This document shows positions 9,119 through 33,417 of a stretch of DNA of 64,000 bases, one piece after another. The translations under genes and the position numbers were made by a program. Position 1 is the first letter of the stretch, and each line of letters starts with the position of its first letter. The DNA lies in sequence record LR756502.1; one strand, written 5' to 3'. The notes under the pieces are model-generated. The model did not search any database. It had not been told where the DNA came from and saw only the letters and a list, made by a program, of their open reading frames with translations.

Positions 9119-10534
9119 TTATAAAAAGTCTACTTGAGCTCTTTCTCTAATCTCCTCAAATGTCCATTCTTGTTTAATATATCCATCTAAGAATACCTCA
9201 ACCAACTCATCACCAACCTCATCATGAGAGTGTTCAATAGTTAACCCATTAACCAATTTCAAACGACCAGCCTTTGACTTCTTGAACGATTGTACTCGTT
9301 CACCATTCTCATTAATTTCAATTGGATTCTTACGAATATCAACTTCTTCCCCATTGATTGTTATAGAAGAACATTTGAAAGCGAACTTCTGTGTATCTCT
9401 ATCTACTTTTTGAAGTAACGCCCCACCCATACCAAATGCTATATTTTCTACTGAAAATCCTTCCTCAACCATCATGTCTAGAACATCAATTATAGATTCA
9501 TAATTAACACCATCACCTTGGATTACTCTAACGTGTGGGTCAATAACTTTGAAACCTTTATCATTGATAACTCCACCAAATTTATCCCAAAGAATATGGA
9601 AAACTTGTCTAAGTGTTTGTACTGGGTCACCACTATCAGGGCGAATTACAAGACGTCCATCACGACTTAGAATTTTATCTCTAAGTTCTGTACCCCAATA
9701 ATCTTTACACGCTCTAATGATATCAAATGAGTCTGATACACAAGCTACAAGTCCTGTTGGATATTGGTCTAACATATTCTCCATAGCCTTTACTTCAAAT
9801 GGTTCTGTCCAAGAAGTAATAGTTGAGTGCTCTGATGCTGGTATGGAGAACGCCAACATATTATCTGTGTTATAAAAGTCTTGTGCTAATAAGATACCTG
9901 ATACTGTATCTGTTCCTAAGAAGTTTACAATATGAGCTGAACAACCAATTGCTGATGATTCAACTGAACTAACTCCACGGAATCCGAAATCATGTAACAT
10001 GAAAGATACGATGTTTTTAATTCCATCACCATCATATGACGTAGTTTTCTTTAAGTAAGAAACAAGTAATTTCTTAATCTCTCTTGATAGAGTACCAACT
10101 GTTGTTGGATACCATACTTGTAATAAGATACTTTCTAGGTAGTTTGTTAACCAAGGAACTTCTGGGTCAGTATTCTCAACTGTAATAAGAACATTGCTTG
10201 TTTTTACGGAAGTCCCTTCTGGAACTGCTTTGATTCTAACTGGTAATCGACCATCGTGTTTTTCAAGGATGTGCATCCATCCCTCTAAATTGAAATGTCC
10301 TGGTCCTAAGTGAGCGTCATAGAATTTATGAGCTTTTGCAATTTTTTCAAGTGTTACAACCTTACCTACTAAATACTGCTTGATGAAGTATTGAAGACCA
10401 TAGAACATGGTGTTGTCAAATTTACCCCCTCTTGATTCTAGGTAAGAGTAAACCTTCGATGTACCTTTTGGGTATTGCTTCCAGTGTGTTGGCTTGTAAC
10501 TGTCTGTTAGCATTAAAATGTTGTCGTTAAACAT
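9119..10534 (-). CDS. nadV: Nicotinamide phosphoribosyltransferase (Nampt/NadV)
   Basis: LTDSYKPTHWKQYP, LHDFGFRG, SIPASEHS, VSDSFD, VIRPDSGDP, IQGDG, FGMGGALLQ and RDTQKFAFK motifs. Confidence 0.95.
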   Translation of the reverse strand: MFNDNILMLTDSYKPTHWKQYPKGTSKVYSYLESRGGKFDNTMFYGLQYFIKQYLVGKVVTLEKIAKAHKFYDAHLGPGHFNLEGWMHILEKHDGRLPVRIKAVPEGTSVKTSNVLITVENTDPEVPWLTNYLESILLQVWYPTTVGTLSREIKKLLVSYLKKTTSYDGDGIKNIVSFMLHDFGFRGVSSVESSAIGCSAHIVNFLGTDTVSGILLAQDFYNTDNMLAFSIPASEHSTITSWTEPFEVKAMENMLDQYPTGLVACVSDSFDIIRACKDYWGTELRDKILSRDGRLVIRPDSGDPVQTLRQVFHILWDKFGGVINDKGFKVIDPHVRVIQGDGVNYESIIDVLDMMVEEGFSVENIAFGMGGALLQKVDRDTQKFAFKCSSITINGEEVDIRKNPIEINENGERVQSFKKSKAGRLKLVNGLTIEHSHDEVGDELVEVFLDGYIKQEWTFEEIRERAQVDFL

Positions 10535-10608
10535 ATATTTTAGTTTTAGTTATTGAAAAATCTTTCTTAAATGTGATTCCTTATGTAATCATAGGTTGTT
10601 CCCATATA

Positions 10609-10639
10609 CAAATATACGAATTATTTCGTAATTAACAAA
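10609..10639 (-). promoter_or_regulatory. Bacteroidota sigma-A type promoter for nadV
   Basis: TTTG-N19-TATATTTG (consensus TTTG-N19/21-TAnnTTTG). Confidence 0.7.
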
Positions 10640-11581
10640 TTATTTTAACTCACTTTTAATGAGTAATTTCATTAGTTCTTGGTGTTCTTGTACCATACCA
10701 ACTTCTGTTGTGTGGTTATCATTCATGTCATACCAAGTGTCTCTAATCCACTTTAGGTCAAACCATCTAAGTTCTGAAATCTCTTGTGATGGTTCAATTC
10801 TACCAAACATAAACTTACACTTGAATAATATAGTCGTAATCTTATCTTCTTCTGATCGGTATCTCCAATCATCTACCCTAAGTGATGTTATATACTTAAT
10901 ATCACCTATTTCAGCTTGGCCAGCTTCATCCATGAACTTTCTTTTTGCAGTATCTTCATATGAAGCGTCTTTTGGGTGAGCAAACCCACCAATAAACCTC
11001 CATCCATCTTCATTCGGTTTTTTTGCTAATAGTACCTTTGTACCATCTTCATTAAATGGTGCTATATCTATACTTGGGTGCACCTTTGGATATTGGTTAT
11101 ATGATTGGTAAATAACACCTGCTCTAAAATCAGATGACTCTTTTACCTGTTCAGACACTATCTTTCTAACCTCTGTTCCTGAAACAAAGGTGTATTGGTC
11201 AAGCTCTTTGCAATCAAATAAACCTCCACCTTTTTTATAGTATGGTATGAAAGAGTCTCTCCCACCATACATCAATACATCACCAATTGGATATATCTCT
11301 CTTATTCTCTTATCCATCTCTAGTGACCATCTTTTATCATCACCGAAATCAGGTAATGCAATAATGGTAATGTCTGGATAGTGCTTTTGAATCATTCTCT
11401 TTCTTGTTTCAAAGTCAAGAGGATTCTTTTTTGTACTTGATGTTCTTGTGACACCAAGAAATAAAATAACTTTTTTGTGGTTATCGACTACCTGTTTAAT
11501 AACGTAGTGATGTGCGTCATGTAGTTCGTGAACTTGAAATCTGCCAACGAGTGCTCCGATTGAATAACTTTTAGTTTCCAT
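10640..11581 (-). CDS. nadM: Bifunctional NMN adenylyltransferase / Nudix (NadM-Nudix, NatV-like) with a degenerate Nudix box
   Basis: VGRFQ..HDAH, KKNPLDFETRK and SGTEVR NMNAT motifs; C-terminal Nudix-like GGFAHPKDASYEDTAKRKFMDEAG; adjacent to nadV. Confidence 0.88.
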   Translation of the reverse strand: METKSYSIGALVGRFQVHELHDAHHYVIKQVVDNHKKVILFLGVTRTSSTKKNPLDFETRKRMIQKHYPDITIIALPDFGDDKRWSLEMDKRIREIYPIGDVLMYGGRDSFIPYYKKGGGLFDCKELDQYTFVSGTEVRKIVSEQVKESSDFRAGVIYQSYNQYPKVHPSIDIAPFNEDGTKVLLAKKPNEDGWRFIGGFAHPKDASYEDTAKRKFMDEAGQAEIGDIKYITSLRVDDWRYRSEEDKITTILFKCKFMFGRIEPSQEISELRWFDLKWIRDTWYDMNDNHTTEVGMVQEHQELMKLLIKSELK

Positions 11582-22861: not shown

Positions 22862-23695
22862 ATGATGAAATTAAGAATCAAGGAGTCTTTAAATGATCAA
22901 ATACATAATATCTACTTATATCTTAGTGGGTATCTTAGAAAGATACTTAAAGTGAAGAGAATGGGTACATCTGAACCTTTTACTGGTACTATGAAATTGC
23001 AATTTGAAGATAATTTTGAATTCTTTGATTATAATAGATGGAGAATAGGACAACCTTGGGGCAAATTTCACCCGGAATATCCTAATCAATGGTATGGAGA
23101 AGACTCTGTTTATATAGAAAACAAACATCTTGTATTGGATAATAGATATCAACCAGTTCAATTATCTACGTGGGATAGTCCAAAAAAATATGATATTTCC
23201 TACTCTGTTGGATTGATTACTTCATATGAATCTTATGGATATGGGTACTACGAGTTTGAGGCTAAATTACCTGATGGTGTTGGATTATGGCCAGCTATTT
23301 GGTTAAGTTGTGTAGACTCATGGCCTCCTGAAATAGATATAACCGAATCATATTCTGATAAAAATGGAGAATATAAGGATAAATTAGAATCAAATTTTCA
23401 CTTTAATTTAGGGGAAAGTAAAACATCGTCCGGAGCAAGAAGTCACCCAATTTACAGGTCTAAAGAGTTAATCAAATTTTCACTCTGGTGGACAAAGGAC
23501 TTTATTAAGGTTTATTATAATGGATATTTGGTTAGAGTAATAACTTCCAAGGACAGTCTTCAATGGTTTAGAGATAAGAAGATGACTATTATACTAAATA
23601 ATGGCATGAGAAGTGATTTTGATAACATACAACCAAAGGAGGAAAAAGTAAGCATTTCAAAGTTTGAAATCTATAGTGTTAAATATTGGATATAA
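22862..23695 (+). CDS. Glycoside hydrolase family 16 (beta-glucanase-like)
   Basis: GYYEFEAKLP, WPAIWL and EIDITE (ExDxxE catalytic motif). Confidence 0.88.
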   Translation: MMKLRIKESLNDQIHNIYLYLSGYLRKILKVKRMGTSEPFTGTMKLQFEDNFEFFDYNRWRIGQPWGKFHPEYPNQWYGEDSVYIENKHLVLDNRYQPVQLSTWDSPKKYDISYSVGLITSYESYGYGYYEFEAKLPDGVGLWPAIWLSCVDSWPPEIDITESYSDKNGEYKDKLESNFHFNLGESKTSSGARSHPIYRSKELIKFSLWWTKDFIKVYYNGYLVRVITSKDSLQWFRDKKMTIILNNGMRSDFDNIQPKEEKVSISKFEIYSVKYWI

Positions 23696-24140: not shown

Positions 24141-25028
24141 ATGAATAAAATAGATTTATTTGGTAGAGAAATACCACTAAGAACACACTTCTGTCAATTC
24201 TTTGAACAAGATCCTGAACCAGTAAACGAACCGACTGTTAGTTTATATGTTAGGTCTAAATTTTGCAACTCAAAATGTAAATTCTGTATATGGTCTGAAG
24301 ATGCTCAATTTTTTAATGAGAAAAAATATAGAGAAGTATTAGAAGGAATTTCTAGTAAAATAAAAATTAAAAAAATATCTTTTACTGGTGGAGAACCAAC
24401 TATGAATTTCAAAAAATTCAAAAAGATGGTTCAGATAGCAAAGGAAATAACACCAAATACTAAGATGTCTGTTAATACAGATGGGTTAAGACTAAAGCAG
24501 TTATTTGAGGATGATATAATTGAGAACTTCTATAGTGTGGCTTTGAGTAGACATCATTTTAATGATGACCTTAATAATGAAATATTTGATTTTAAGTGCC
24601 CATCAACAAATGAGATAAGAGATATACAAAGTAACTTTAAAAATAAAGAAATACTACATTTTAGTTGTAATTTAATAAAAGGATATCTTGATGATAAAGA
24701 TAAGATATATGAATTTTTAGAGTGGTCATCATCAGTTGATGTAAGAAGTGTTGGGTTTGTATCATTAATGCCTGTGAATGATTATAGTAAAGAAAAATTT
24801 ATAGATTTTAAGATTAAAGACTTAATAAATGATAGATTTAATTTAACAAAGGAGTGGCAATATAAGAATATGTGTAAATGTAACAATTATATTTACATAC
24901 CCGAAAGCCTTAATAACACGATTAAGGTATATCAAAAGAATACATTCAAACCATTTGATATTCAAGAGAACTTAACATTTGATGGTGAGAACCTTAAGGT
25001 TGGATTTGGTGATGATATAATTTACTAA
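24141..25028 (+). CDS. Radical SAM enzyme
   Basis: CNSKCKFC (CxxxCxxC), FTGGEPT, VNTDG and VALSRHH; C-terminal CKC. Confidence 0.92.
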   Translation: MNKIDLFGREIPLRTHFCQFFEQDPEPVNEPTVSLYVRSKFCNSKCKFCIWSEDAQFFNEKKYREVLEGISSKIKIKKISFTGGEPTMNFKKFKKMVQIAKEITPNTKMSVNTDGLRLKQLFEDDIIENFYSVALSRHHFNDDLNNEIFDFKCPSTNEIRDIQSNFKNKEILHFSCNLIKGYLDDKDKIYEFLEWSSSVDVRSVGFVSLMPVNDYSKEKFIDFKIKDLINDRFNLTKEWQYKNMCKCNNYIYIPESLNNTIKVYQKNTFKPFDIQENLTFDGENLKVGFGDDIIY

Positions 25029-25424: not shown

Positions 25425-26432
25425 CTATACATTGAAATTAGTACTAACTACATCAATGCATGATTGATATCTTTCGTTCCAATCAACTCCACCAATTTCA
25501 ATGAATTCACATCCTCTATCAATTAGTTCCTTCTTAATTACTTCATAATGTTCCAATCTGGAATCTAAGAAACTTCTAGTACCATCTTGAACCGATTTAC
25601 AATCAGGCATTAGTAATAAATATAGATCATATTTCTTTTTAGTATTTAAAATATTTAGGAACCAATCCTCTACTTGTAGATATTCGTCTGGACAATACAT
25701 CTTTGTGAATATGTATGTAGTAATATCCTCTGTGTCACAAAATATAAGTTTATTTGATTGTAGAAGTAACCAATCTTCAAGAGATTGTCTACCCCTTGAT
25801 ATAGGCATAAAGTCATCAATCGTTACCTTATTACCATTCGCCTCATATATTAGTCTACCATATTCAACCACAAAATTTGTATTGAAGTAAGTTGCGAGCT
25901 TTTTAGTCATTGTTGATTTACCAACAGACTCTGGTCCCATAATAGCAATTCTTTTTACAAAGTGAGGTCTAACCTGCTCGGGAATATATTCCCAATTACT
26001 AAATGTTTCGGTTCTTACTTTTGTCCCTGATGTGGGAAATGTCTTTCTGTCCAAATCCACAATATGATGTTTTATTCCAAGTTTCTCTGAATAAGGATCT
26101 CCGTAGTTTTCTGATGTGAATATTACATCGAGATCTGGTGGGCAATTATTCCTGGCTATTCCTACCCATATATCCCAAAAGTTCGGGTCCTCTTCTGGTA
26201 CTTGAGGTACCTCTTCTTTGAAGTTAATTATATTTAATCTCTTCTCACCCTTATAGATTTCTTTCAACCAATTAAATCTATCATCTCCTTCTATCGGTTC
26301 ATTTTTAAGAGAACATACCAATAGTGTAACTATCTCGGCGTTTTCTAACGCAGTGTTTATTAGAAATAAATGACCTTTGTGTGGTGGTAAAAACTTACCT
26401 ACAATTAATCCACTTTTATACTTTTTCTCCAT
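25425..26432 (-). CDS. nadR: NadR-type bifunctional NMN adenylyltransferase / ribosylnicotinamide kinase (no HTH)
   Basis: VGKFLPPHKGH (HxGH), SGTKVR, IAIMGPESVGKST (Walker A), EYGR and FCDT motifs. Confidence 0.93.
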   Translation of the reverse strand: MEKKYKSGLIVGKFLPPHKGHLFLINTALENAEIVTLLVCSLKNEPIEGDDRFNWLKEIYKGEKRLNIINFKEEVPQVPEEDPNFWDIWVGIARNNCPPDLDVIFTSENYGDPYSEKLGIKHHIVDLDRKTFPTSGTKVRTETFSNWEYIPEQVRPHFVKRIAIMGPESVGKSTMTKKLATYFNTNFVVEYGRLIYEANGNKVTIDDFMPISRGRQSLEDWLLLQSNKLIFCDTEDITTYIFTKMYCPDEYLQVEDWFLNILNTKKKYDLYLLLMPDCKSVQDGTRSFLDSRLEHYEVIKKELIDRGCEFIEIGGVDWNERYQSCIDVVSTNFNV

Positions 26433-26950
26433 TTTAAAATACCTGATATTGATAACAAAAGGAATATAAAGTATATTCCAGATGAAAGGTATAGTTCATT
26501 AACATAAAAGAACCATACAAATATTATATCCGCAATTATCCAATATATCCAATTTTCTATTTTCCTGTAAGCTAGAAGAATCATCGCCATTATACTCAAC
26601 GATGTTGTTAATCCATCGAAGTATGGCATTCTACCACCAATTTTCATCATTGATAGTGATATAATCATTGTTAATATTACTGTTGATCCGAATATAGCTA
26701 CTCTATTATGAGTATCTATGTACTTTATTGGATATTTGGATGGCTTTTTCCAGTTATACCAACCAAGAATAGATTGAGCAATGAATATAAATTGTAAATA
26801 CATATTACCCCATATTTGGTTTTTGCCAAATAGTATCATGTAGAATATGATTCCAATAATACCAAATGGCCAACACCAAATATTGTTTTTTACTGTTAAT
26901 ATTACAGATAGTAAACTAAATATAACAGCGATTATCTCGATAGTATCCAT
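26405..26950 (-). CDS. pnuC: PnuC-family nicotinamide riboside/vitamin transporter
   Basis: Multi-pass; KNNIWCWPFGII, DGLTTSLS and ENWIYWIIADI (WxxWxxxD) motifs. Confidence 0.92.
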   Translation of the reverse strand: MDTIEIIAVIFSLLSVILTVKNNIWCWPFGIIGIIFYMILFGKNQIWGNMYLQFIFIAQSILGWYNWKKPSKYPIKYIDTHNRVAIFGSTVILTMIISLSMMKIGGRMPYFDGLTTSLSIMAMILLAYRKIENWIYWIIADIIFVWFFYVNELYLSSGIYFIFLLLSISGILKWRKSIKVD

Positions 26951-29001
26951 TAGAATTTATATGATAAACTTACATAATAGTTTCTTGGAGATCCAACATA
27001 ATATGATGATGTTGGTCCATTTCCATTAAATCCAACATATCCGGATGTGTAATATTTTTGACTTGTTAGGTTATTTACTGTTAATTTGAAACACACATTT
27101 TTAATATTTACTTGTGTGAAGATATCTAAAAGATAAAACTCCGGAGTAACAAACTTATCATTCTGTGTATTATCTAAGTATGACTTAGATACATATCTTC
27201 CATTTACTCCAATAGTAATATATTTGTAACTATAGGACATTGATGTATTGCTTATAATATTTGGTGTTAGTAAAGGAGATACGTTTTTGTATGTTATACT
27301 ATCAAAGTCCGTTGTGTATTCCTTTATTTTATTATATGAGTAGTTTACGTTCTGTGAGAACACAAACCCTTTTATTGGAGTCCAAAGTAGGTCAAACTCC
27401 ACACCACTTCTGAAAGAGCTTTTGACATTTTTTCTTAGAGGTAGTCCTATATAAGACATTTGTCCTATCTGAGCAATCTCATTCTTGAAGTCCATATAGT
27501 ATCCATTCAGATCAACTGATAACTTCTTTGATTTATATGAGACACCAATCTCAAAGTCAGCAACTTTCTCTGATTTAATATTTCGTATATCAATAGTGTC
27601 AACACCAAAACCAACATATTGATATTTGTTTATAGGTGAGACATCATCATATCCATTAAATAAGTCATTTCTTGTTGGTTCTCGATGATTTACACCAATT
27701 GATGTGTATATAGATAGGTTATCATTCTGATTGAATCTAAATCCGCCCTTTGGATTAAAGAAAGTGTAGTCTATATTATCTAATCTGTTTTTATTGGATG
27801 TATCTCCCGATGCGTATATAAATGTAACCGATCTATATTGTAAATCAATAAATGAAACCAACTTCTTTGTTAGATTGTAGTGTAGTTTCATAAATGATGA
27901 TATTTCGGTCTTATATCCTGTGTTATTATATAAATTGGTTCCGAAGTTTGGATAGTTGGACATCATGTGTGTTCTATCATAAGAGCTGGTATTTATTCCG
28001 AATTGGAACTTAACTCTATCCTTTGAATAATTAAATGTTGACATTATTCCGTAGAAGTTTGACTTCAATTTAAACTTATACATGTCATTTGTTGATGTAA
28101 TTGTATCTGGGAATAAAATATCATAATTACCATCAAGACTATTATAGAAAATAGAAGTGTTTAGGTATGAGTTTTTATCAATGTTAGATATCCACTGTAG
28201 TGATATTAAATGTTGATTAAATTTATCTTGCTCTTCCTTTGTTAGGTAGTTTGTTCTAGGGTCAACTTTAATATCTTCAATATTTGTGGCTAGATACGCC
28301 ATTCCATTATTAGACTGACCAGAGAATGCTGTTAGTTTAAGTATATTTTTATCACCATAGTATCCAGCTGACGCGAAGAATGTCCTTGAATCATTGAATG
28401 AGTTATATCTATACCCATCAGATCCAATCATTGAATATCGACCATATACAGCGAACTTATTTTTAATACCGGAGTTATATCCAACCGAGTTTCGGTATGT
28501 ATTATATGATCCATATCCTGTTTCAAGTGATGTGTAGTTTGAGTCTGTTAGATTTGGTCCCTCAAAATTAATAGAACCTCCATAAGACGATGACCCATAT
28601 GATGATGTTCCAATACCTCTTTGTATTTGTACTGAGTTTAGGTTCGATCCAAAGTCTGGATAGTTTGAGAAATATACTCCTTGGTCTTCAGGCTCATTTA
28701 ATGGAATTCCATTTAGAGTCATATTTATCCTTGTTTGGTCAATTCCTCTTATTCTAAAATATGTATACGAATTATATAAACCATTATCGGAGTTGGCTGT
28801 GATTGATGGTGTTTTTGATAGTATATAAGACATATCTTGTCCAGTATATTCCCTTTGAATATCAACCTTTTTTATGGTCTTTTGAGTAACTGGTGTCGAT
28901 TGATCAGCTCTTACTGATACAATCTGTACTTCCTTTAGAGTATCTTGTCCAAATGATAGAAGTGTTGTTATTACAAATAATATGGATAATAGTTTTTTCA
29001 T
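26950..29001 (-). CDS. TonB-dependent outer-membrane receptor
   Basis: Signal peptide; LKEVQIV TonB-box-like segment; plug motifs IRGIDQTRINMTLNGIPLN and QIQRG..S..YG...GGSINF; ends YVSLSYKF (beta signal). Confidence 0.93.
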   Translation of the reverse strand: MKKLLSILFVITTLLSFGQDTLKEVQIVSVRADQSTPVTQKTIKKVDIQREYTGQDMSYILSKTPSITANSDNGLYNSYTYFRIRGIDQTRINMTLNGIPLNEPEDQGVYFSNYPDFGSNLNSVQIQRGIGTSSYGSSSYGGSINFEGPNLTDSNYTSLETGYGSYNTYRNSVGYNSGIKNKFAVYGRYSMIGSDGYRYNSFNDSRTFFASAGYYGDKNILKLTAFSGQSNNGMAYLATNIEDIKVDPRTNYLTKEEQDKFNQHLISLQWISNIDKNSYLNTSIFYNSLDGNYDILFPDTITSTNDMYKFKLKSNFYGIMSTFNYSKDRVKFQFGINTSSYDRTHMMSNYPNFGTNLYNNTGYKTEISSFMKLHYNLTKKLVSFIDLQYRSVTFIYASGDTSNKNRLDNIDYTFFNPKGGFRFNQNDNLSIYTSIGVNHREPTRNDLFNGYDDVSPINKYQYVGFGVDTIDIRNIKSEKVADFEIGVSYKSKKLSVDLNGYYMDFKNEIAQIGQMSYIGLPLRKNVKSSFRSGVEFDLLWTPIKGFVFSQNVNYSYNKIKEYTTDFDSITYKNVSPLLTPNIISNTSMSYSYKYITIGVNGRYVSKSYLDNTQNDKFVTPEFYLLDIFTQVNIKNVCFKLTVNNLTSQKYYTSGYVGFNGNGPTSSYYVGSPRNYYVSLSYKF

Positions 29002-29012
29002 GTTTATTATTT

Positions 29013-29543
29013 TTAATTGTTTTTATCTTTGATATAATTTATAAATTTCATAATTCGTTTATCGTGGTTAAATGCGAAGTCATACTCACCTAAGTCTTTA
29101 ATGTTGACCCATCTAACATCATCAGTTTCGCCTTCTTCGCAGTATTTATTTGTTATGATTGGATCCTCCGCTGATGTGATTGATAGTCCAAAGTATAAGG
29201 CAACATCCTGATTATAATTTAGAGTTGGGTTTGTCACGATATCATATGGATATTTCATCATGTTAAACTCTATATTCTCTTCTGATATCTCCGTTATATC
29301 TAATCCAGTTTCCTCAAACACTTCCCTCATTGCACATTGTGTAGCACTTTCATTCCAATCTAAGTATCCACATGGATTGCACCATTTATTTGGTGATGAT
29401 ATCTTTGATCCTCTTTTCACAAGAAGAACTTTTTCATTATTCAATATAATGGTAGTTACTGTCGCAAGAGATCTAGAGATCCAATGAGCTTTACCACTAT
29501 CATCCTTTACTATATGATTTGGTTTATTTTCGAATTTTGACAT
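29013..29543 (-). CDS. Nudix hydrolase (ADP-ribose pyrophosphatase-like)
   Basis: Intact Nudix box GYLDWNESATQCAMREVFEETGL. Confidence 0.9.
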   Translation of the reverse strand: MSKFENKPNHIVKDDSGKAHWISRSLATVTTIILNNEKVLLVKRGSKISSPNKWCNPCGYLDWNESATQCAMREVFEETGLDITEISEENIEFNMMKYPYDIVTNPTLNYNQDVALYFGLSITSAEDPIITNKYCEEGETDDVRWVNIKDLGEYDFAFNHDKRIMKFINYIKDKNN

Positions 29544-29545
29544 AT

Positions 29546-29788
29546 TTATCTCTTTTGAAATCGGTTAGATATTTTACTATTTTTGGCAAAAATAGCACCA
29601 TCTATCTTCGAGAAAAACTTTTTAATCTTATCGAAAATGGATGGTGTGTATTTTTTTTCTTCTATTCCTAGAAGCTTATTTATGTGATTGTTTGCCTTAT
29701 CTGTCAGAATAGGTTCTTCTCCTTCTGAGAATATATTCTGTAATCTTTGATAGGGAGGTAATTTTTGAATTTCGTTTTCGTCGCTCAT
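29546..29788 (-). CDS. Hypothetical protein
   Basis: 80-aa ORF, first gene after a host-type promoter. Confidence 0.65.
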   Translation of the reverse strand: MSDENEIQKLPPYQRLQNIFSEGEEPILTDKANNHINKLLGIEEKKYTPSIFDKIKKFFSKIDGAIFAKNSKISNRFQKR

Positions 29789-29805
29789 AGTTTTACTTTG
29801 AATGA

Positions 29806-29836
29806 CAAATATAAGGATATTTTCTTTAAAACGAAA
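29806..29836 (-). promoter_or_regulatory. Bacteroidota sigma-A type promoter for the Nudix-TBDR-pnuC-nadR operon
   Basis: TTTC-N19-TATATTTG upstream of ATG 29788. Confidence 0.65.
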
Positions 29837-29838
29837 TT

Positions 29839-30300
29839 CTAAGACTTAAAATATAAATCAGATTCAGCTTGTCTCCTTTTTACTAATCCTGGTAATGTCT
29901 TTCCACCACCCTTAGTCCATTTACCAAACTCAACTTTAATAGACTCATCGATTGGATTGATATTTACCTTCTTTAGTAGGGTTGAACTTTTTAGATTCTG
30001 AGGTCCTAGGTTATAACAAAAGCTAACTAGAGCATCAAATTGATTTTGATTTATATCATCTCTACAAAATGAGTCAACATATTTTTCAAACGATGATAAC
30101 ATGTCTTTTAATAGTTCGGTTGCTCTTGCTTCTGTTATTTCTGGATCGGATAGTGTTACCTTTTTACCATTTCCGTAAAATGTTGCTCCATATCCAATTG
30201 TTGGTATATTTGCTGGACATAGATAAGGTTTCCCTTTGAATCCTTCAAATTGTTTTATTAGTGATATGCATCCTTCACTAGCTTTTACTATTTTTGCCAT
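29839..30300 (-). CDS. Lysozyme/endolysin (GH24 muramidase)
   Basis: IKQFEG...YLCPANIPTIGYG, NQNQFDALVSFCYNLG and LPGLVKRRQAE; CAATATATA late-like motif upstream. Confidence 0.93.
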   Translation of the reverse strand: MAKIVKASEGCISLIKQFEGFKGKPYLCPANIPTIGYGATFYGNGKKVTLSDPEITEARATELLKDMLSSFEKYVDSFCRDDINQNQFDALVSFCYNLGPQNLKSSTLLKKVNINPIDESIKVEFGKWTKGGGKTLPGLVKRRQAESDLYFKS

Positions 30301-31981: not shown

Positions 31982-32230
31982 TTATTTTTTAATTTTCTGA
32001 ATAGATTTGAACTCCATTATTAGTTTATATGATAGTCTCCATAAGACAACAACCACTACCCACATCATAGAGGGTAGTGATGAGAATTTTGGTATAATTG
32101 AAAATGAGTCAACTATAAAAAATATACTAATGTATGGTATAATTATTATAGCTAGATAGAATAGGTCTCCTTTAATACCTGGTAGTTTTTCATACCACTG
32201 ATTTGTTTTTATAATAAATCTTGATATCAT
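31982..32230 (-). CDS. Small two-TM membrane protein
   Basis: 82 aa, two hydrophobic segments, basic C-terminus. Confidence 0.6.
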   Translation of the reverse strand: MISRFIIKTNQWYEKLPGIKGDLFYLAIIIIPYISIFFIVDSFSIIPKFSSLPSMMWVVVVVLWRLSYKLIMEFKSIQKIKK

Positions 32231-33366
32231 ACGTTGTATATTTTTTTTCTTATACTAACTAATAAAGTATTTATAAAATCCTCATCTACCGATTCTGGTA
32301 AATTTGATGACTTAAATAGATTGTCTATAACTACAATCTCCGACTCTACATCATTGATAAGAGTTTGTAGATCAACCTCGCCCTTCCTAATAGATATTAG
32401 CTCTTGTGCATTTGGTCTTTTTACGATAATACCTTTGCCTTCTGCTATCTCTCGAGCCATTTGCATAAGCCTTTTACAATGCATCATGTTCTTACCATCA
32501 ATTTTCTGACCATGAGATGAAACATCTACCCATCTAGACATATTTCTCTCATTTATCCAAGTTTCATATGACTTATAATCATTGCAGTGTTGAGTGTATC
32601 CATCTTTGTTATAACTAACTTGTCCAATTAACCATTCTTTTTCTTCTGATCCGAAATCTGGTACAGATGATAATCTAATATCATTAGAGTCTTCAAAGGA
32701 AATACCTTTAAATTTCATCTTAGGTATACCCATTTCTGTGAAATATTCGGGTTCATAGAGATCAGAGAAGTCATAGTAGAGAGCATATATATCTCTGGAA
32801 TGTGGAATTTTTACCAGACCACACTTTGACTGGTCCTTTTCTGATCTTTCTAGCCATTCAGATATCGGTGTTGTTTTAGATCCCTGAATCAGGTAGCAAA
32901 AGTCTAATGGGGTTTTGCGAGTTATCTTTTCTTTCTCCCAATTTTGTTTTTTGTTTTGACCCTTTGCTTTTTGAATTTGTGCCTTTGCATAACCACCAAA
33001 TGAATTAGCGCAGATTTTGGTGATGAACTTATCCCTGTTGGATAGAATTTCATCAAAGATTGGATCTTTATATAGGATACAATCTTCAGGTGTATTTAGT
33101 AGTTCTAATACAGTTGGGTTGTTTTTTTGTAGGAGTTCAAGAAATCTACGAACCTCATAAATGACCGTGTCATTTTTATCATCATTTATTTGCTCAATAT
33201 ATTTGTTACCGAGAATATCATCATGTGATTGTATAAATACCCCTGAATAATCAATATCGGATGTTGGTACCGATGTGCCATATGCATGTGACCCTCTTAT
33301 AACTAAGTATAGTGGTTTAGCGTTTGGTGATTTACTATTAATAAAATCTATTAGTTCTTGCTTCAT
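32227..33366 (-). CDS. Pol-beta superfamily nucleotidyltransferase (RlaP/YcgL-like)
   Basis: RGSHAYGTSVPTSDIDYSGVF (GS...DxD), NNPTVLELL and DGKNMMHCKRL motifs. Confidence 0.85.
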   Translation of the reverse strand: MKQELIDFINSKSPNAKPLYLVIRGSHAYGTSVPTSDIDYSGVFIQSHDDILGNKYIEQINDDKNDTVIYEVRRFLELLQKNNPTVLELLNTPEDCILYKDPIFDEILSNRDKFITKICANSFGGYAKAQIQKAKGQNKKQNWEKEKITRKTPLDFCYLIQGSKTTPISEWLERSEKDQSKCGLVKIPHSRDIYALYYDFSDLYEPEYFTEMGIPKMKFKGISFEDSNDIRLSSVPDFGSEEKEWLIGQVSYNKDGYTQHCNDYKSYETWINERNMSRWVDVSSHGQKIDGKNMMHCKRLMQMAREIAEGKGIIVKRPNAQELISIRKGEVDLQTLINDVESEIVVIDNLFKSSNLPESVDEDFINTLLVSIRKKIYNV

Positions 33367-33385
33367 ATTAAAATTAGATTATTCA

Positions 33386-33417
33386 CAAATATATAAAGAA
33401 ATGTTTATAATGCCAAA
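33386..33417 (-). promoter_or_regulatory. Bacteroidota sigma-A type promoter
   Basis: TTTG-N20-TATATTTG upstream of ATG 33366. Confidence 0.7.

What the first reader, a model, noticed from the sequence alone, without database searches (positions are those of the whole stretch)
25425..29836. Complete import route to NAD+: TonB receptor + PnuC + NadR + Nudix under a host-type early promoter
Seen: one tightly coupled operon (TBDR stop overlaps the pnuC ATG as TAATG; pnuC overlaps nadR) behind TTTC-N19-TATATTTG. Known: PnuC imports nicotinamide riboside and NadR converts NR to NMN to NAD+. Phage NAD+ reconstitution pathways NARP1 (Adps+Namat) and NARP2 (Nampt+Nmnat) recycle intracellular breakdown products to defeat Thoeris/SIR2/TIR NADases. 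Vibrio phage KVP40 has pnuC/nadR-like genes. Inference: adding a full-length outer-membrane TonB-dependent transporter gives an outer membrane to inner membrane to cytoplasm pipeline that pulls precursor from outside the cell, independent of the ADPR/nicotinamide pool. This would be an import-based third NAD+ rescue strategy. A phage-encoded intact TBDR is unusual in itself. Caveat: in Bacteroidota, TBDR+Pnu pairs also import thiamine (PnuT), and the WxxWxxxD motif alone does not fix the substrate.
Basis: partly seen in the sequence, partly recalled or inferred. Interest (0 to 1): 0.85.

Follow-up and report, generated by a model that had tools for sequence, protein, structure and literature searches.

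The report
Huge-phage outer-membrane-to-NAD+ salvage cassette
A 642-kb lake phage carries an intact three-gene cassette copied from Bacteroidota bacteria: an outer-membrane TonB-dependent receptor, the inner-membrane transporter PnuC and the enzyme NadR. Together they most likely pull a vitamin-B3 nucleoside in from outside the cell and turn it into NAD+, which extends the recently published phage pathway NARP3 with an outer-membrane step.

Summary
On the minus strand lie orf80, a 176-aa Nudix, a 683-aa TonB-dependent receptor (TBDR), PnuC and an HTH-less NadR.

The window is 100% identical to LR756502.1, a 642-kb uncultured huge phage predicted to infect Bacteroidetes. TBDR>PnuC>NadR is a conserved unit:
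- It occurs in 15 of 17 IMG/VR contigs that carry the TBDR.
- It occurs in 43 of 69 assessable bacterial loci (Bacteroidota, Gemmatimonadaceae), often beside NrtR, NAMPT, Prs and Macro genes.

This context, and the absence of any riboswitch, favours an NAD precursor over thiamine. All three genes give the same coarse phylogeny and have dN/dS of 0.09-0.36 among phage copies.

- The "import-based third strategy" was published in 2026 as NARP3 (PnuC+NadR). Phage TBDRs with NMN-transporter neighbours were noted in an October 2026 preprint.
- orf80 and Nudix belong to a separate phage backbone block and are not a conserved part of the cassette.
- The same window also holds a NARP2-type pair (NAMPT plus NadM-Nudix) at 9119-11581.

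"Early promoter" and the anti-defence benefit are untested. Verdict: a new variant of a known kind, of moderate interest.

The parts
29806..29836 (-). Promoter-like site TTTC-N19-TATATTTG; the -7 element fits the Bacteroidota TAnnTTTG type
   Evidence: Read. It lies 18 nt before the orf80 ATG, in the 50-nt gap after the lysozyme gene. Statistics are weak: 110 TANNTTTG sites in the window, only 3 just upstream of genes. That the motif type is Bacteroidota-specific rests on my own knowledge.
29546..29788 (-). orf80, an 80-aa protein with no family match. It is the conserved partner of the Nudix in the phage backbone, not of the transporter cassette.
   Evidence: No Pfam, NCBIfam or PHROG hit. 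Homologous 77-80-aa ORFs directly precede the Nudix in L111, L112 and L113, where no TBDR follows.
29013..29543 (-). Stand-alone Nudix hydrolase (176 aa) with an intact Nudix box; substrate unassigned; adjacency to the cassette is specific to this genome
   Evidence: PF00293 at 2e-20. The 88 homologues are all single-domain and none carries the NrtR winged-helix domain. Only weak, mixed PDB matches. Contexts.
26950..29001 (-). Full-length TonB-dependent outer-membrane transporter (683 aa): signal peptide, plug, barrel, C-terminal Phe
   Evidence: Pfam Plug and barrel. AlphaFold model pLDDT 88.4, pTM 0.87. Best fold matches are PqqU 9c4o (TM 0.82) and YncD 6v81. 2901 homologues at E<=1e-10. dN/dS 0.09-0.31 among phage copies.
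26405..26950 (-). PnuC-family inner-membrane transporter (181 aa); start codon shares one base with the TBDR stop
   Evidence: PF04973 at 1e-46; TIGR01528 above its cut-off. phrog_1880. PDB 4qtn PnuC at 9e-8. Junction read.
25425..26432 (-). NadR-like bifunctional NMN adenylyltransferase / ribosylnicotinamide kinase without the HTH domain (335 aa); overlaps PnuC by 28 nt
   Evidence: TIGR01526 full-length at 244 bits. NF005988 aligned from position 62 of 411, so there is no HTH. PDB hits: 8x7f at 7e-45, 1lw7 at 1e-41, 9x6f (NARP3 enzyme Bas30_86) at 2.5e-38. The HxGH-type, SGTxxR-type and Walker A motifs are aligned.
9119..10534 (-). NAMPT (nicotinamide phosphoribosyltransferase), part of a second NARP2-type NAD+ arm in the same window
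   Evidence: NF006629 at 583 bits, cut-off 405. Pfam NAMPT_N and NAPRTase. 76-85% identical to the NAMPT that lies about 2.5 kb upstream of the TBDR in relatives L114 and L010.
10640..11581 (-). NadM-like adenylyltransferase fused to a Nudix domain (313 aa), partner of NAMPT
   Evidence: Pfam NUDIX at 3e-12 plus weak CTP_transf_like. Weak matches to the bifunctional NMNAT/Nudix NCBIfam models. Conserved next to NAMPT in L010, L114, L006 and L057.

Best explanation
TBDR-PnuC-NadR is a three-gene, three-compartment salvage cassette that huge phages took from Bacteroidota hosts and keep intact.

Inferred mechanism:
- The TonB-dependent receptor, energised by the host TonB-ExbBD system, takes a pyridine nucleoside or nucleotide across the outer membrane. 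The ligand is nicotinamide riboside, or NMN/NAD that is trimmed in the periplasm.
- PnuC carries nicotinamide riboside across the inner membrane.
- The HTH-less NadR traps it by phosphorylation to NMN and adenylylates NMN to NAD+.

With the NAMPT plus NadM-Nudix pair in the same window, the phage can rebuild NAD+ both from external precursor and from internal nicotinamide. The likely benefit is to hold up the NAD+ pool through a long infection. This includes infection under NAD+-depleting defences, as shown for the two-gene NARP3 pathway.

Shown here: gene identities, intactness, coupling, conservation, host origin, NAD-type genomic context.
Inferred: the ligand of the TBDR, the enzyme and transport activities, expression timing, and the selective benefit.
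For: - Identity of parts.
- NadR is a sequence relative of the experimentally characterised NARP3 enzyme Bas30_86 (9x6f, E 2.5e-38). NARP3 function is described in PMC13464706.
- Phage origin: 100% match to LR756502.1. Host prediction is Bacteroidetes (PMC7162821).
- The trio is conserved in LR745206 and LR756501, in metagenomic relatives L010, L011, L012 and L114, and in 15 of 17 IMG/VR contigs carrying the TBDR.
- Cellular homologues: of 69 assessable loci, 43 show TBDR>PnuC>NadR, 6 more TBDR>NadR, and 9 have PnuC or NadR within 6 kb. 23 of 80 loci also carry NrtR, NAMPT, Prs, Macro, NADAR, KptA or ARH genes. Cultured isolates are included: Mucilaginibacter, Chitinophaga, Zobellia, Flammeovirga.
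- In the 735-kb phage the trio is flanked by NadE and an isochorismatase/PncA-like gene.
- All three proteins agree on affinity. The window group is closer to bacterial clade II, and four of the five 735-kb-group loci are closer to clade I for each protein scored (L108 PnuC sides with clade II; L108 NadR was not scored).
- dN/dS is 0.09-0.36 among phage copies.
- The trio stayed intact while its flanks were rearranged in this genome.
- No riboswitch was found.
Against: - No activity, ligand or expression data exist for this protein set.
- NadR scores below the TIGR01526 equivalog cut-off (244 versus 341 bits).
- The PnuC family also contains thiamine and riboflavin transporters, and sequence alone does not fix the substrate.
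- No TBDR with a pyridine-nucleoside ligand is described in the searchable literature, so the outer-membrane step rests on gene context alone.
- The trees are neighbour-joining without bootstrap.
- Some "bacterial" MAG contigs may be misbinned phages (L008, L016, L026).
- The anti-defence role is extrapolated from a T5-like coliphage.
Confidence: 0.7

Rival explanations
1. Same transport-and-synthesis mechanism, but the benefit is ordinary metabolic support and not counter-defence. The cassette would supply NAD+ for a very large genome's replication and NAD-dependent enzymes in nutrient-poor water.
For: - The cassette is a copy of a housekeeping-type bacterial salvage cluster.
- PnuC and NadR occur in 495 and 791 phage records of many lineages.
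- No defence or anti-defence gene was recognised next to the cassette.
- KVP40-type NAD salvage was first described as a metabolic function (cited in PMC9723777).
Against: - The two-gene version was shown to restore NAD+ and phage growth against Sir2-HerA (PMC13464706).
- Bacterial neighbours rich in ADP-ribose-processing genes (Macro, NADAR, ARH, KptA) hint at NAD-turnover stress.
- The two benefits are not exclusive.
Confidence: 0.4
2. The TBDR acts mainly at the cell surface, for example by remodelling the receptor landscape or excluding superinfecting phages, and its linkage to PnuC-NadR is secondary.
For: - The preprint on huge-phage outer-membrane proteins proposes receptor interference as one role for such proteins, and reports transcription of a Lak-phage TBDR.
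- In Lak phages the TBDR lies 5.8 kb from NadR-PnuC and is not adjacent.
Against: - In this clade the TBDR stop overlaps the PnuC start.
- The order TBDR>PnuC>NadR is kept in 15 of 17 viral loci and 43 of 69 bacterial loci.
- The three genes share affinity patterns.
- The plug, the barrel and the 65 family-invariant columns are retained.
Confidence: 0.1
3. The pair TBDR plus Pnu transporter imports thiamine or another vitamin (PnuT/PnuX type), as in the known Bacteroidota thiamine systems.
For: The PnuC family includes thiamine and riboflavin transporters, and TBDR+PnuT pairs exist in Bacteroidota.
Against: - NadR is translationally coupled to the transporter.
- No TPP or FMN riboswitch occurs in the window or in 7 related loci.
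- Neighbours are NrtR, NAMPT, Prs, NadE and PncA-like; none of the neighbours identified is a thiamine gene.
- TIGR01528 is matched above its cut-off.
Confidence: 0.04
4. The cassette is bacterial contamination or a decaying passenger with no function in the phage.
For: It is clearly host-derived: 43-49% identical to Bacteroidota proteins.
Against: - The window matches a curated 642-kb phage genome.
- The cassette is flanked by phage genes: lysozyme, RlaP, radical SAM and, in relatives, PolB.
- All three ORFs are intact, with dN/dS 0.09-0.36 among phage copies.
Confidence: 0.02

Closest known systems
NARP3 (phage PnuC-like Bas30_87 plus NadR-like Bas30_86; Yan et al., Sci Adv 2026, PMC13464706)
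   Same: An adjacent PnuC-family transporter and an HTH-less bifunctional NadR in a phage. The NadR here matches the Bas30_86 crystal-structure sequence (9x6f) at E 2.5e-38 over its full length. The logic is the same: import NR, then make NAD+.
   Different: The published system has two genes, in T5-like phages of Enterobacteriaceae, with no outer-membrane component; the paper does not mention TonB or the outer membrane. Here a TBDR is translationally coupled upstream, the gene order is PnuC>NadR, the source is a Bacteroidota-type cluster, and the carrier is a 642-kb phage. Activity is untested here.
Bacteroidota/Gemmatimonadaceae chromosomal cluster (NrtR)-(NadM-Nudix)-NAMPT-...-TBDR-PnuC-NadR-(Prs)
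   Same: Same three genes in the same order, often with the same short overlaps. Proteins are 36-48% identical for the TBDR and 28-45% for PnuC and NadR. Relatives of this phage also keep NadM-Nudix and NAMPT a few kb upstream, as bacteria do.
   Different: The phage copies have no NrtR regulator gene and none of the Prs, Macro, NADAR or ARH genes within the regions read. L115, of unknown origin, does have NrtR. I found no paper that describes the bacterial cluster or its TBDR ligand.
NARP2 / Vibrio phage KVP40 NadV plus NatV salvage
   Same: The same window encodes NAMPT and a NadM-like/Nudix fusion at 9119-11581.
   Different: That pair recycles intracellular nicotinamide. It is a separate block 16 kb from the import cassette in this genome.
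PqqU/YncD, the TonB-dependent transporter for the cofactor PQQ (PDB 9c4o, 6v81)
   Same: Best structural matches of the predicted TBDR (TM 0.81-0.84) and among the best profile matches. Both are small-cofactor TBDTs of about 700 aa with no SusD partner.
   Different: Only 17-18% identical. Ligand specificity cannot be transferred.
Bacteroidota thiamine uptake pair (outer-membrane TBDR plus PnuT)
   Same: Same architecture: a TBDR followed by a Pnu-family inner-membrane transporter (own knowledge).
   Different: No TPP riboswitch, and NadR and NAD genes as neighbours rather than thiamine genes.

Membership tests
NARP3 (phage PnuC-like + NadR-like NAD+ reconstitution pathway) | Adjacent PnuC-family and NadR-family genes in a phage genome | tested here: met
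   The ORFs overlap by 28 nt. The window is 100% identical to phage LR756502.1.
NARP3 (phage PnuC-like + NadR-like NAD+ reconstitution pathway) | NadR-like enzyme with NMNAT and RNK modules and no N-terminal HTH | tested here: met
   NF005988 aligned at positions 62-404 of 411; TIGR01526 aligned at 2-325 of 325. The adenylyltransferase HxGH-type and SGTxxR-type motifs and the kinase Walker A align with 8x7f and 1lw7.
NARP3 (phage PnuC-like + NadR-like NAD+ reconstitution pathway) | Sequence relationship to the characterised proteins Bas30_86/87 | tested here: met
   NadR versus 9x6f/9x6h (Bas30_86): E 2.5e-38, residues 5-327. PnuC falls in phrog_1880 and PF04973. Direct comparison with Bas30_87 was not made.
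NARP3 (phage PnuC-like + NadR-like NAD+ reconstitution pathway) | NR uptake, NR-to-NAD+ conversion, and restoration of NAD+ under NADase defence | not testable with these tools
   No biochemical or infection data.
TonB-dependent outer-membrane transporter | Signal peptide, plug domain, 22-strand-type barrel, C-terminal aromatic residue | tested here: met
   Pfam Plug and barrel. Model pLDDT 88.4 with an N-terminal helix at 2-15, the plug, then the barrel. TM 0.82 to PqqU. The protein ends in Phe.
TonB-dependent outer-membrane transporter | TonB box and dependence on TonB-ExbBD | tested here: inconclusive
   A short beta-prone segment after the signal peptide (residues about 22-32) lies in the low-confidence linker. 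It includes family-conserved columns: R31 is invariant among 14 sequences and at 90% or more among 83. No TonB, ExbB or ExbD gene was sought in the phage, and dependence cannot be tested.
Bacteroidota NAD-precursor uptake cluster (TBDR-PnuC-NadR, NrtR-linked) | Order TBDR>PnuC>NadR on one strand with short gaps or overlaps | tested here: met
   Window; 43 of 69 bacterial loci and 15 of 17 viral loci.
Bacteroidota NAD-precursor uptake cluster (TBDR-PnuC-NadR, NrtR-linked) | NrtR regulator next to the cluster | tested here: not met
   No NrtR hit in the window. The Nudix upstream has no NrtR winged-helix domain, and neither do its 88 homologues.
Thiamine-type TBDR + PnuT system | TPP riboswitch and thiamine-salvage neighbours | tested here: not met
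   No Rfam family above the gathering score in the window. In the 7 related loci the only matches are tRNAs, in L006 and L008. The neighbours identified by homology are NAD genes.
NARP2 (NAMPT + NMNAT) | Phage-encoded NAMPT with an NMN adenylyltransferase | tested here: met
   Window 9119-10534 is NAMPT, above the NCBIfam cut-off. Window 10640-11581 is a NadM-like/Nudix fusion with weak adenylyltransferase matches.
NARP1 (Adps + Namat) | PRPS-like Adps gene | tested here: not met
   A bacterial Prs query found nothing in the window at E<=1e-5. The rest of the 642-kb genome was not examined.

The most novel reading that the evidence does not exclude
The TBDR clade found here would be the first TonB-dependent transporters for pyridine nucleosides or nucleotides (the vitamin-B3 family). 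Huge phages of Bacteroidota would carry it so that NARP3-type NAD+ rebuilding does not depend on passive outer-membrane permeability. An infected cell could then actively scavenge trace NR, NMN or NAD, for example from neighbours already lysed.
Probability: 0.4. Interest if true: 0.7.

Novelty: new variant of a known kind. Interest (0 to 1): 0.55.

Why it matters
If the outer-membrane step is real, three things follow:
- TonB-dependent transporters gain a new substrate class. A widespread and apparently undescribed NAD-precursor uptake cluster in Bacteroidota and Gemmatimonadaceae gets a name.
- Phage NAD+ reconstitution (NARP3) exists in a three-compartment form. Huge phages would hold it together with a NARP2-type arm, which points to strong selection on NAD+ supply during long infections.
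- It becomes a clear case of a phage carrying a full-length, conserved, 22-strand-type outer-membrane transporter as part of a metabolic pathway and not only as a surface protein.

The core idea (import plus NadR) is already published, so the gain is incremental.

Tried and rejected
1. Nudix as a truncated NrtR. tblastn showed 28-32% identity to the Nudix half of NrtR in Flammeovirga-type loci. However, all 88 homologues are stand-alone Nudix proteins. In L111, L112 and L113 they sit in a backbone block (RlaP, DUF6576, orf80, Nudix) without the TBDR. Rejected as part of the cassette; the substrate is left open.
2. Single acquisition by phages. NJ trees do not make the phage sequences monophyletic. 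There are two affinity groups.
3. Lak phages as members of the same cassette. Their TBDR is only 27-28% identical and lies 5.8 kb from NadR-PnuC. Left unresolved.
4. Promoter enrichment. TANNTTTG is hardly enriched in non-coding DNA (15 of 110 sites against 10% non-coding), and the sigma-70 scan equals the shuffles.
5. Riboswitch control. None found.
6. Direct sequence search of the TBDR against the PDB found nothing. A profile search and a fold search were needed.
7. The small ORFs just upstream of the TBDR in relatives, and the 205-aa ORF between TBDR and PnuC in the 735-kb phage, have no family match and no counterpart in the window.
8. The radical SAM gene that follows NadR in relatives could not be assigned a function.
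9. One Rfam call failed because too much sequence was submitted, and was repeated with less.

Full report
**Observation.**
On the minus strand, from 29788 down to 25425, lie five ORFs:
- orf80 (29546-29788)
- a 176-aa Nudix (29013-29543)
- a 683-aa TonB-dependent receptor, TBDR (26950-29001)
- a 181-aa PnuC (26405-26950)
- a 335-aa NadR-like protein (25425-26432)

Pfam and NCBIfam confirm each identity:
- The TBDR has Plug and barrel domains.
- PnuC matches PF04973 at 1e-46 and TIGR01528 above its cut-off.
- NadR matches TIGR01526 over its full length at 244 bits, below the equivalog cut-off of 341. It aligns to E. coli-type NadR only from position 62, so it has no HTH domain.
- The Nudix matches PF00293.

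The junctions were read directly. TBDR and PnuC share one base (TAATG). PnuC and NadR overlap by 28 nt. The Nudix to TBDR gap is 11 nt. TTTC-N19-TATATTTG sits 18 nt before the orf80 start, in the 50-nt gap after a phage lysozyme gene.

The motif fits the Bacteroidota -7 element, which I know from my own background, but its statistical weight is small. TANNTTTG occurs 110 times in the window, and only three sites lie just upstream of genes. "Early" timing cannot be assessed.

**Where it comes from.**
The window is 100% identical to LR756502.1, a 642,428-bp uncultured phage. [quoted passage not shown] It came from a French freshwater lake (PMC9723777).

**What the three core genes are.**
- **NadR.** It matches solved NadR structures: 8x7f at 7e-45, 1lw7 at 1e-41 and 6gye. 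It also matches 9x6f/9x6h at 2.5e-38. Those two entries are Bas30_86, the enzyme of the published phage pathway NARP3. The adenylyltransferase motifs and the kinase P-loop are aligned and present.
- **PnuC.** It matches the N. mucosa PnuC structure 4qtn and the phage family phrog_1880.
- **TBDR.** Its model has high confidence (pLDDT 88.4, pTM 0.87) and shows a signal helix, a flexible linker, a plug and a barrel. Its best structural neighbours are the PQQ cofactor transporter PqqU (9c4o, TM 0.82) and YncD. A profile search also recovers these.

**The trio is a conserved unit in phages.**
- The same order TBDR>PnuC>NadR is found in LR745206 and in the 735-kb LR756501. In LR756501 it is flanked by NAD synthase and an isochorismatase/PncA-like gene.
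- It is found in the closest metagenomic relatives, whose TBDRs are 59-70% identical.
- It is found in 15 of 17 IMG/VR contigs that carry the TBDR, on contigs of up to 483 kb.
- Among phage copies, dN/dS is 0.09-0.36 for all three genes, with dS saturated.

**The trio is of host type.**
TBDR homologues at 43-49% identity lie on Bacteroidota chromosomes. On a 3.3-Mb Cyclobacteriaceae contig the layout is NrtR, Nudix, NAMPT, PRPP synthetase, x, TBDR, PnuC, NadR. A Bacteroidia contig adds NADAR, KptA and Macro genes. Xanthocytophaga has an ADP-ribosylglycohydrolase between the TBDR and NadR.

A scan of one genome per species found 559 relatives. The best 80 loci are about 57 Bacteroidota, 15 Gemmatimonadaceae and 8 others by record title. 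Of these, 69 have enough downstream DNA to assess:

| Arrangement | Loci |
|---|---|
| TBDR>PnuC>NadR | 43 |
| TBDR>NadR | 6 |
| PnuC or NadR within 6 kb | 9 |
| None | 11 |

Of the 80 loci, 23 also carry NrtR, NAMPT, Prs, Macro, NADAR, KptA, ARH or NadE genes. Cultured isolates are among them, which rules out a purely metagenomic artefact.

No riboswitch of any kind is present in the window or in seven related loci. The substrate is very probably an NAD precursor and not thiamine.

**Transfer as a block.**
In rough NJ trees, and in simple identity comparisons, all nine phage sequences of the window's group are closer to bacterial clade II for TBDR, PnuC and NadR alike. Clade II holds the loci with NrtR, NAMPT and Macro contexts. 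Four of the five loci in the 735-kb phage group (L002, L107, L105, L104) are closer to clade I (Chitinophaga, Mucilaginibacter and others) for all three proteins. The fifth, L108, sides with clade I for the TBDR but with clade II for PnuC, and its NadR was not scored. This points to co-inheritance of the three genes. It also points to at least two sources, or to an old split. The trees have no support values.

**What does not belong to the cassette.**
The Nudix and orf80 are a different module. The Nudix has 88 homologues, all stand-alone. On contigs of 617, 269 and 216 kb, the block RlaP, DUF6576, small ORFs, (lysozyme), orf~80, Nudix is conserved, but no TBDR follows it.

Conversely, relatives L010, L114 and L001 all place orf258, small ORFs, TBDR, PnuC, NadR, a small ORF and a radical SAM gene on one strand. 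L010 and L114 add NadM-Nudix and NAMPT upstream of this run and a PolB gene downstream. In the window those same genes are split:
- the NAMPT block lies at 7.4-15.4 kb
- the radical SAM gene lies at 24141-25028 on the opposite strand
- the trio lies at 25.4-29.0 kb

So in this genome the trio was relocated or inverted as an intact unit and landed behind orf80 and the Nudix. The Nudix substrate cannot be assigned.

**A second NAD+ arm.**
Window 9119-10534 is a NAMPT, above the NCBIfam cut-off. Window 10640-11581 is a NadM-like/Nudix fusion. This is the KVP40/NARP2 type of pathway. The phage therefore does not rely on import alone.

**Comparison with what is known.**
- PnuC and NadR are common phage genes, with 495 and 791 of 50,697 records matching.
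- The PnuC plus NadR pair was shown in 2026 to import nicotinamide riboside, make NAD+ and overcome Sir2-HerA. It was named NARP3 (PMC13464706). That paper does not mention an outer-membrane component.
- TBDR homologues occur in only 24 phage records: the four largest genomes, the 15 Lak phages and a few faecal fragments.
[quoted passage not shown] It notes NMN-transporter genes among their neighbours and shows transcription of a Lak TBDR.
- In Lak-B4 the TBDR lies 5.8 kb upstream of NadR-PnuC.
- I found no paper describing a TonB-dependent transporter for nicotinamide riboside, or the bacterial TBDR-PnuC-NadR cluster. The searchable library is limited.

**Mechanism and verdict.**
The most likely mechanism has three steps. 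TonB-dependent uptake of a pyridine nucleoside or nucleotide across the outer membrane is inferred from context only. PnuC transport of nicotinamide riboside follows from family membership and context. NadR kinase and adenylyltransferase steps to NAD+ follow from motifs, homology to characterised enzymes and context.

The benefit could be NAD+ supply in general or NARP3-like counter-defence. The data here cannot separate the two.

The finding is real and well conserved, but its central idea has been published. What remains new is the outer-membrane extension, its Bacteroidota origin and its pairing with NARP2 in a huge phage. I rate it a new variant of a known kind with interest 0.55.

Noticed in passing
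window 9119-11581 (-): NAMPT plus a NadM-like/Nudix fusion, a NARP2/KVP40-type NAD+ salvage pair. In relatives L010 and L114 it lies only about 2.5 kb upstream of the TBDR cassette; here it is 16 kb away.
   Followed up: yes
window 24141-25028 (+): Radical SAM protein with weak MoaA/viperin-like matches. It follows NadR on the same strand in at least ten related phage loci but is inverted relative to the cassette here. Function unresolved.
   Followed up: partly
window 33366-33400 (-): A second and better Bacteroidota-type promoter-like site, TTTG-N20-TATATTTG, lies 20 nt before the RlaP-like gene (32227-33366). That gene heads the conserved backbone block ending in orf80 and the Nudix.
   Followed up: partly
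L008 10097-13824: About ten tRNA genes directly after NadR, followed by WYL, peptidase S24 and RNase T genes, on a 575,752-bp "Bacteroidia MAG" contig. This contig, and the 651,911-bp contig of L016, might be misbinned huge phages.
   Followed up: no
L026 (MAG labelled Deltaproteobacteria, 16.5-kb contig): Its TBDR, PnuC and NadR nest among phage sequences in all three trees, so it is probably a misbinned phage fragment. Several other loci carry non-Bacteroidota labels (Thalassovita, Hydrocarboniphaga, Staskawiczbacteria, Marinamargulisbacteria) that look like binning errors.
   Followed up: no
L002 7205-7822 and 9496-9846: In the 735-kb phage, a 205-aa ORF with no family match sits between the TBDR and PnuC, and a 116-aa ORF sits between NadR and the PncA-like gene. 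The cluster there is NadE, TBDR, x, PnuC, NadR, x, isochorismatase.
   Followed up: partly
L116 (Prevotella phage Lak-B4) 8997-18653: Lak phages carry NadR>PnuC, the NARP3 gene order, 5.8 kb downstream of a very divergent TBDR (27% identity) on the same strand.
   Followed up: partly
window 22862-23695 (+) and 29839-30300 (-): A GH16 glycoside hydrolase (beta-glycanase-like) and a phage lysozyme flank the region. Both are cell-envelope or polysaccharide-acting genes near the transporter cassette.
   Followed up: no
L115 (12.2-kb contig): A contig of unknown origin (phage or bacterial) carries NadM-Nudix, ..., NrtR, NAMPT, x, x, TBDR (with an N-terminal CarboxypepD_reg domain) and PnuC. It looks like a possible intermediate between the bacterial and phage layouts.
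   Followed up: no
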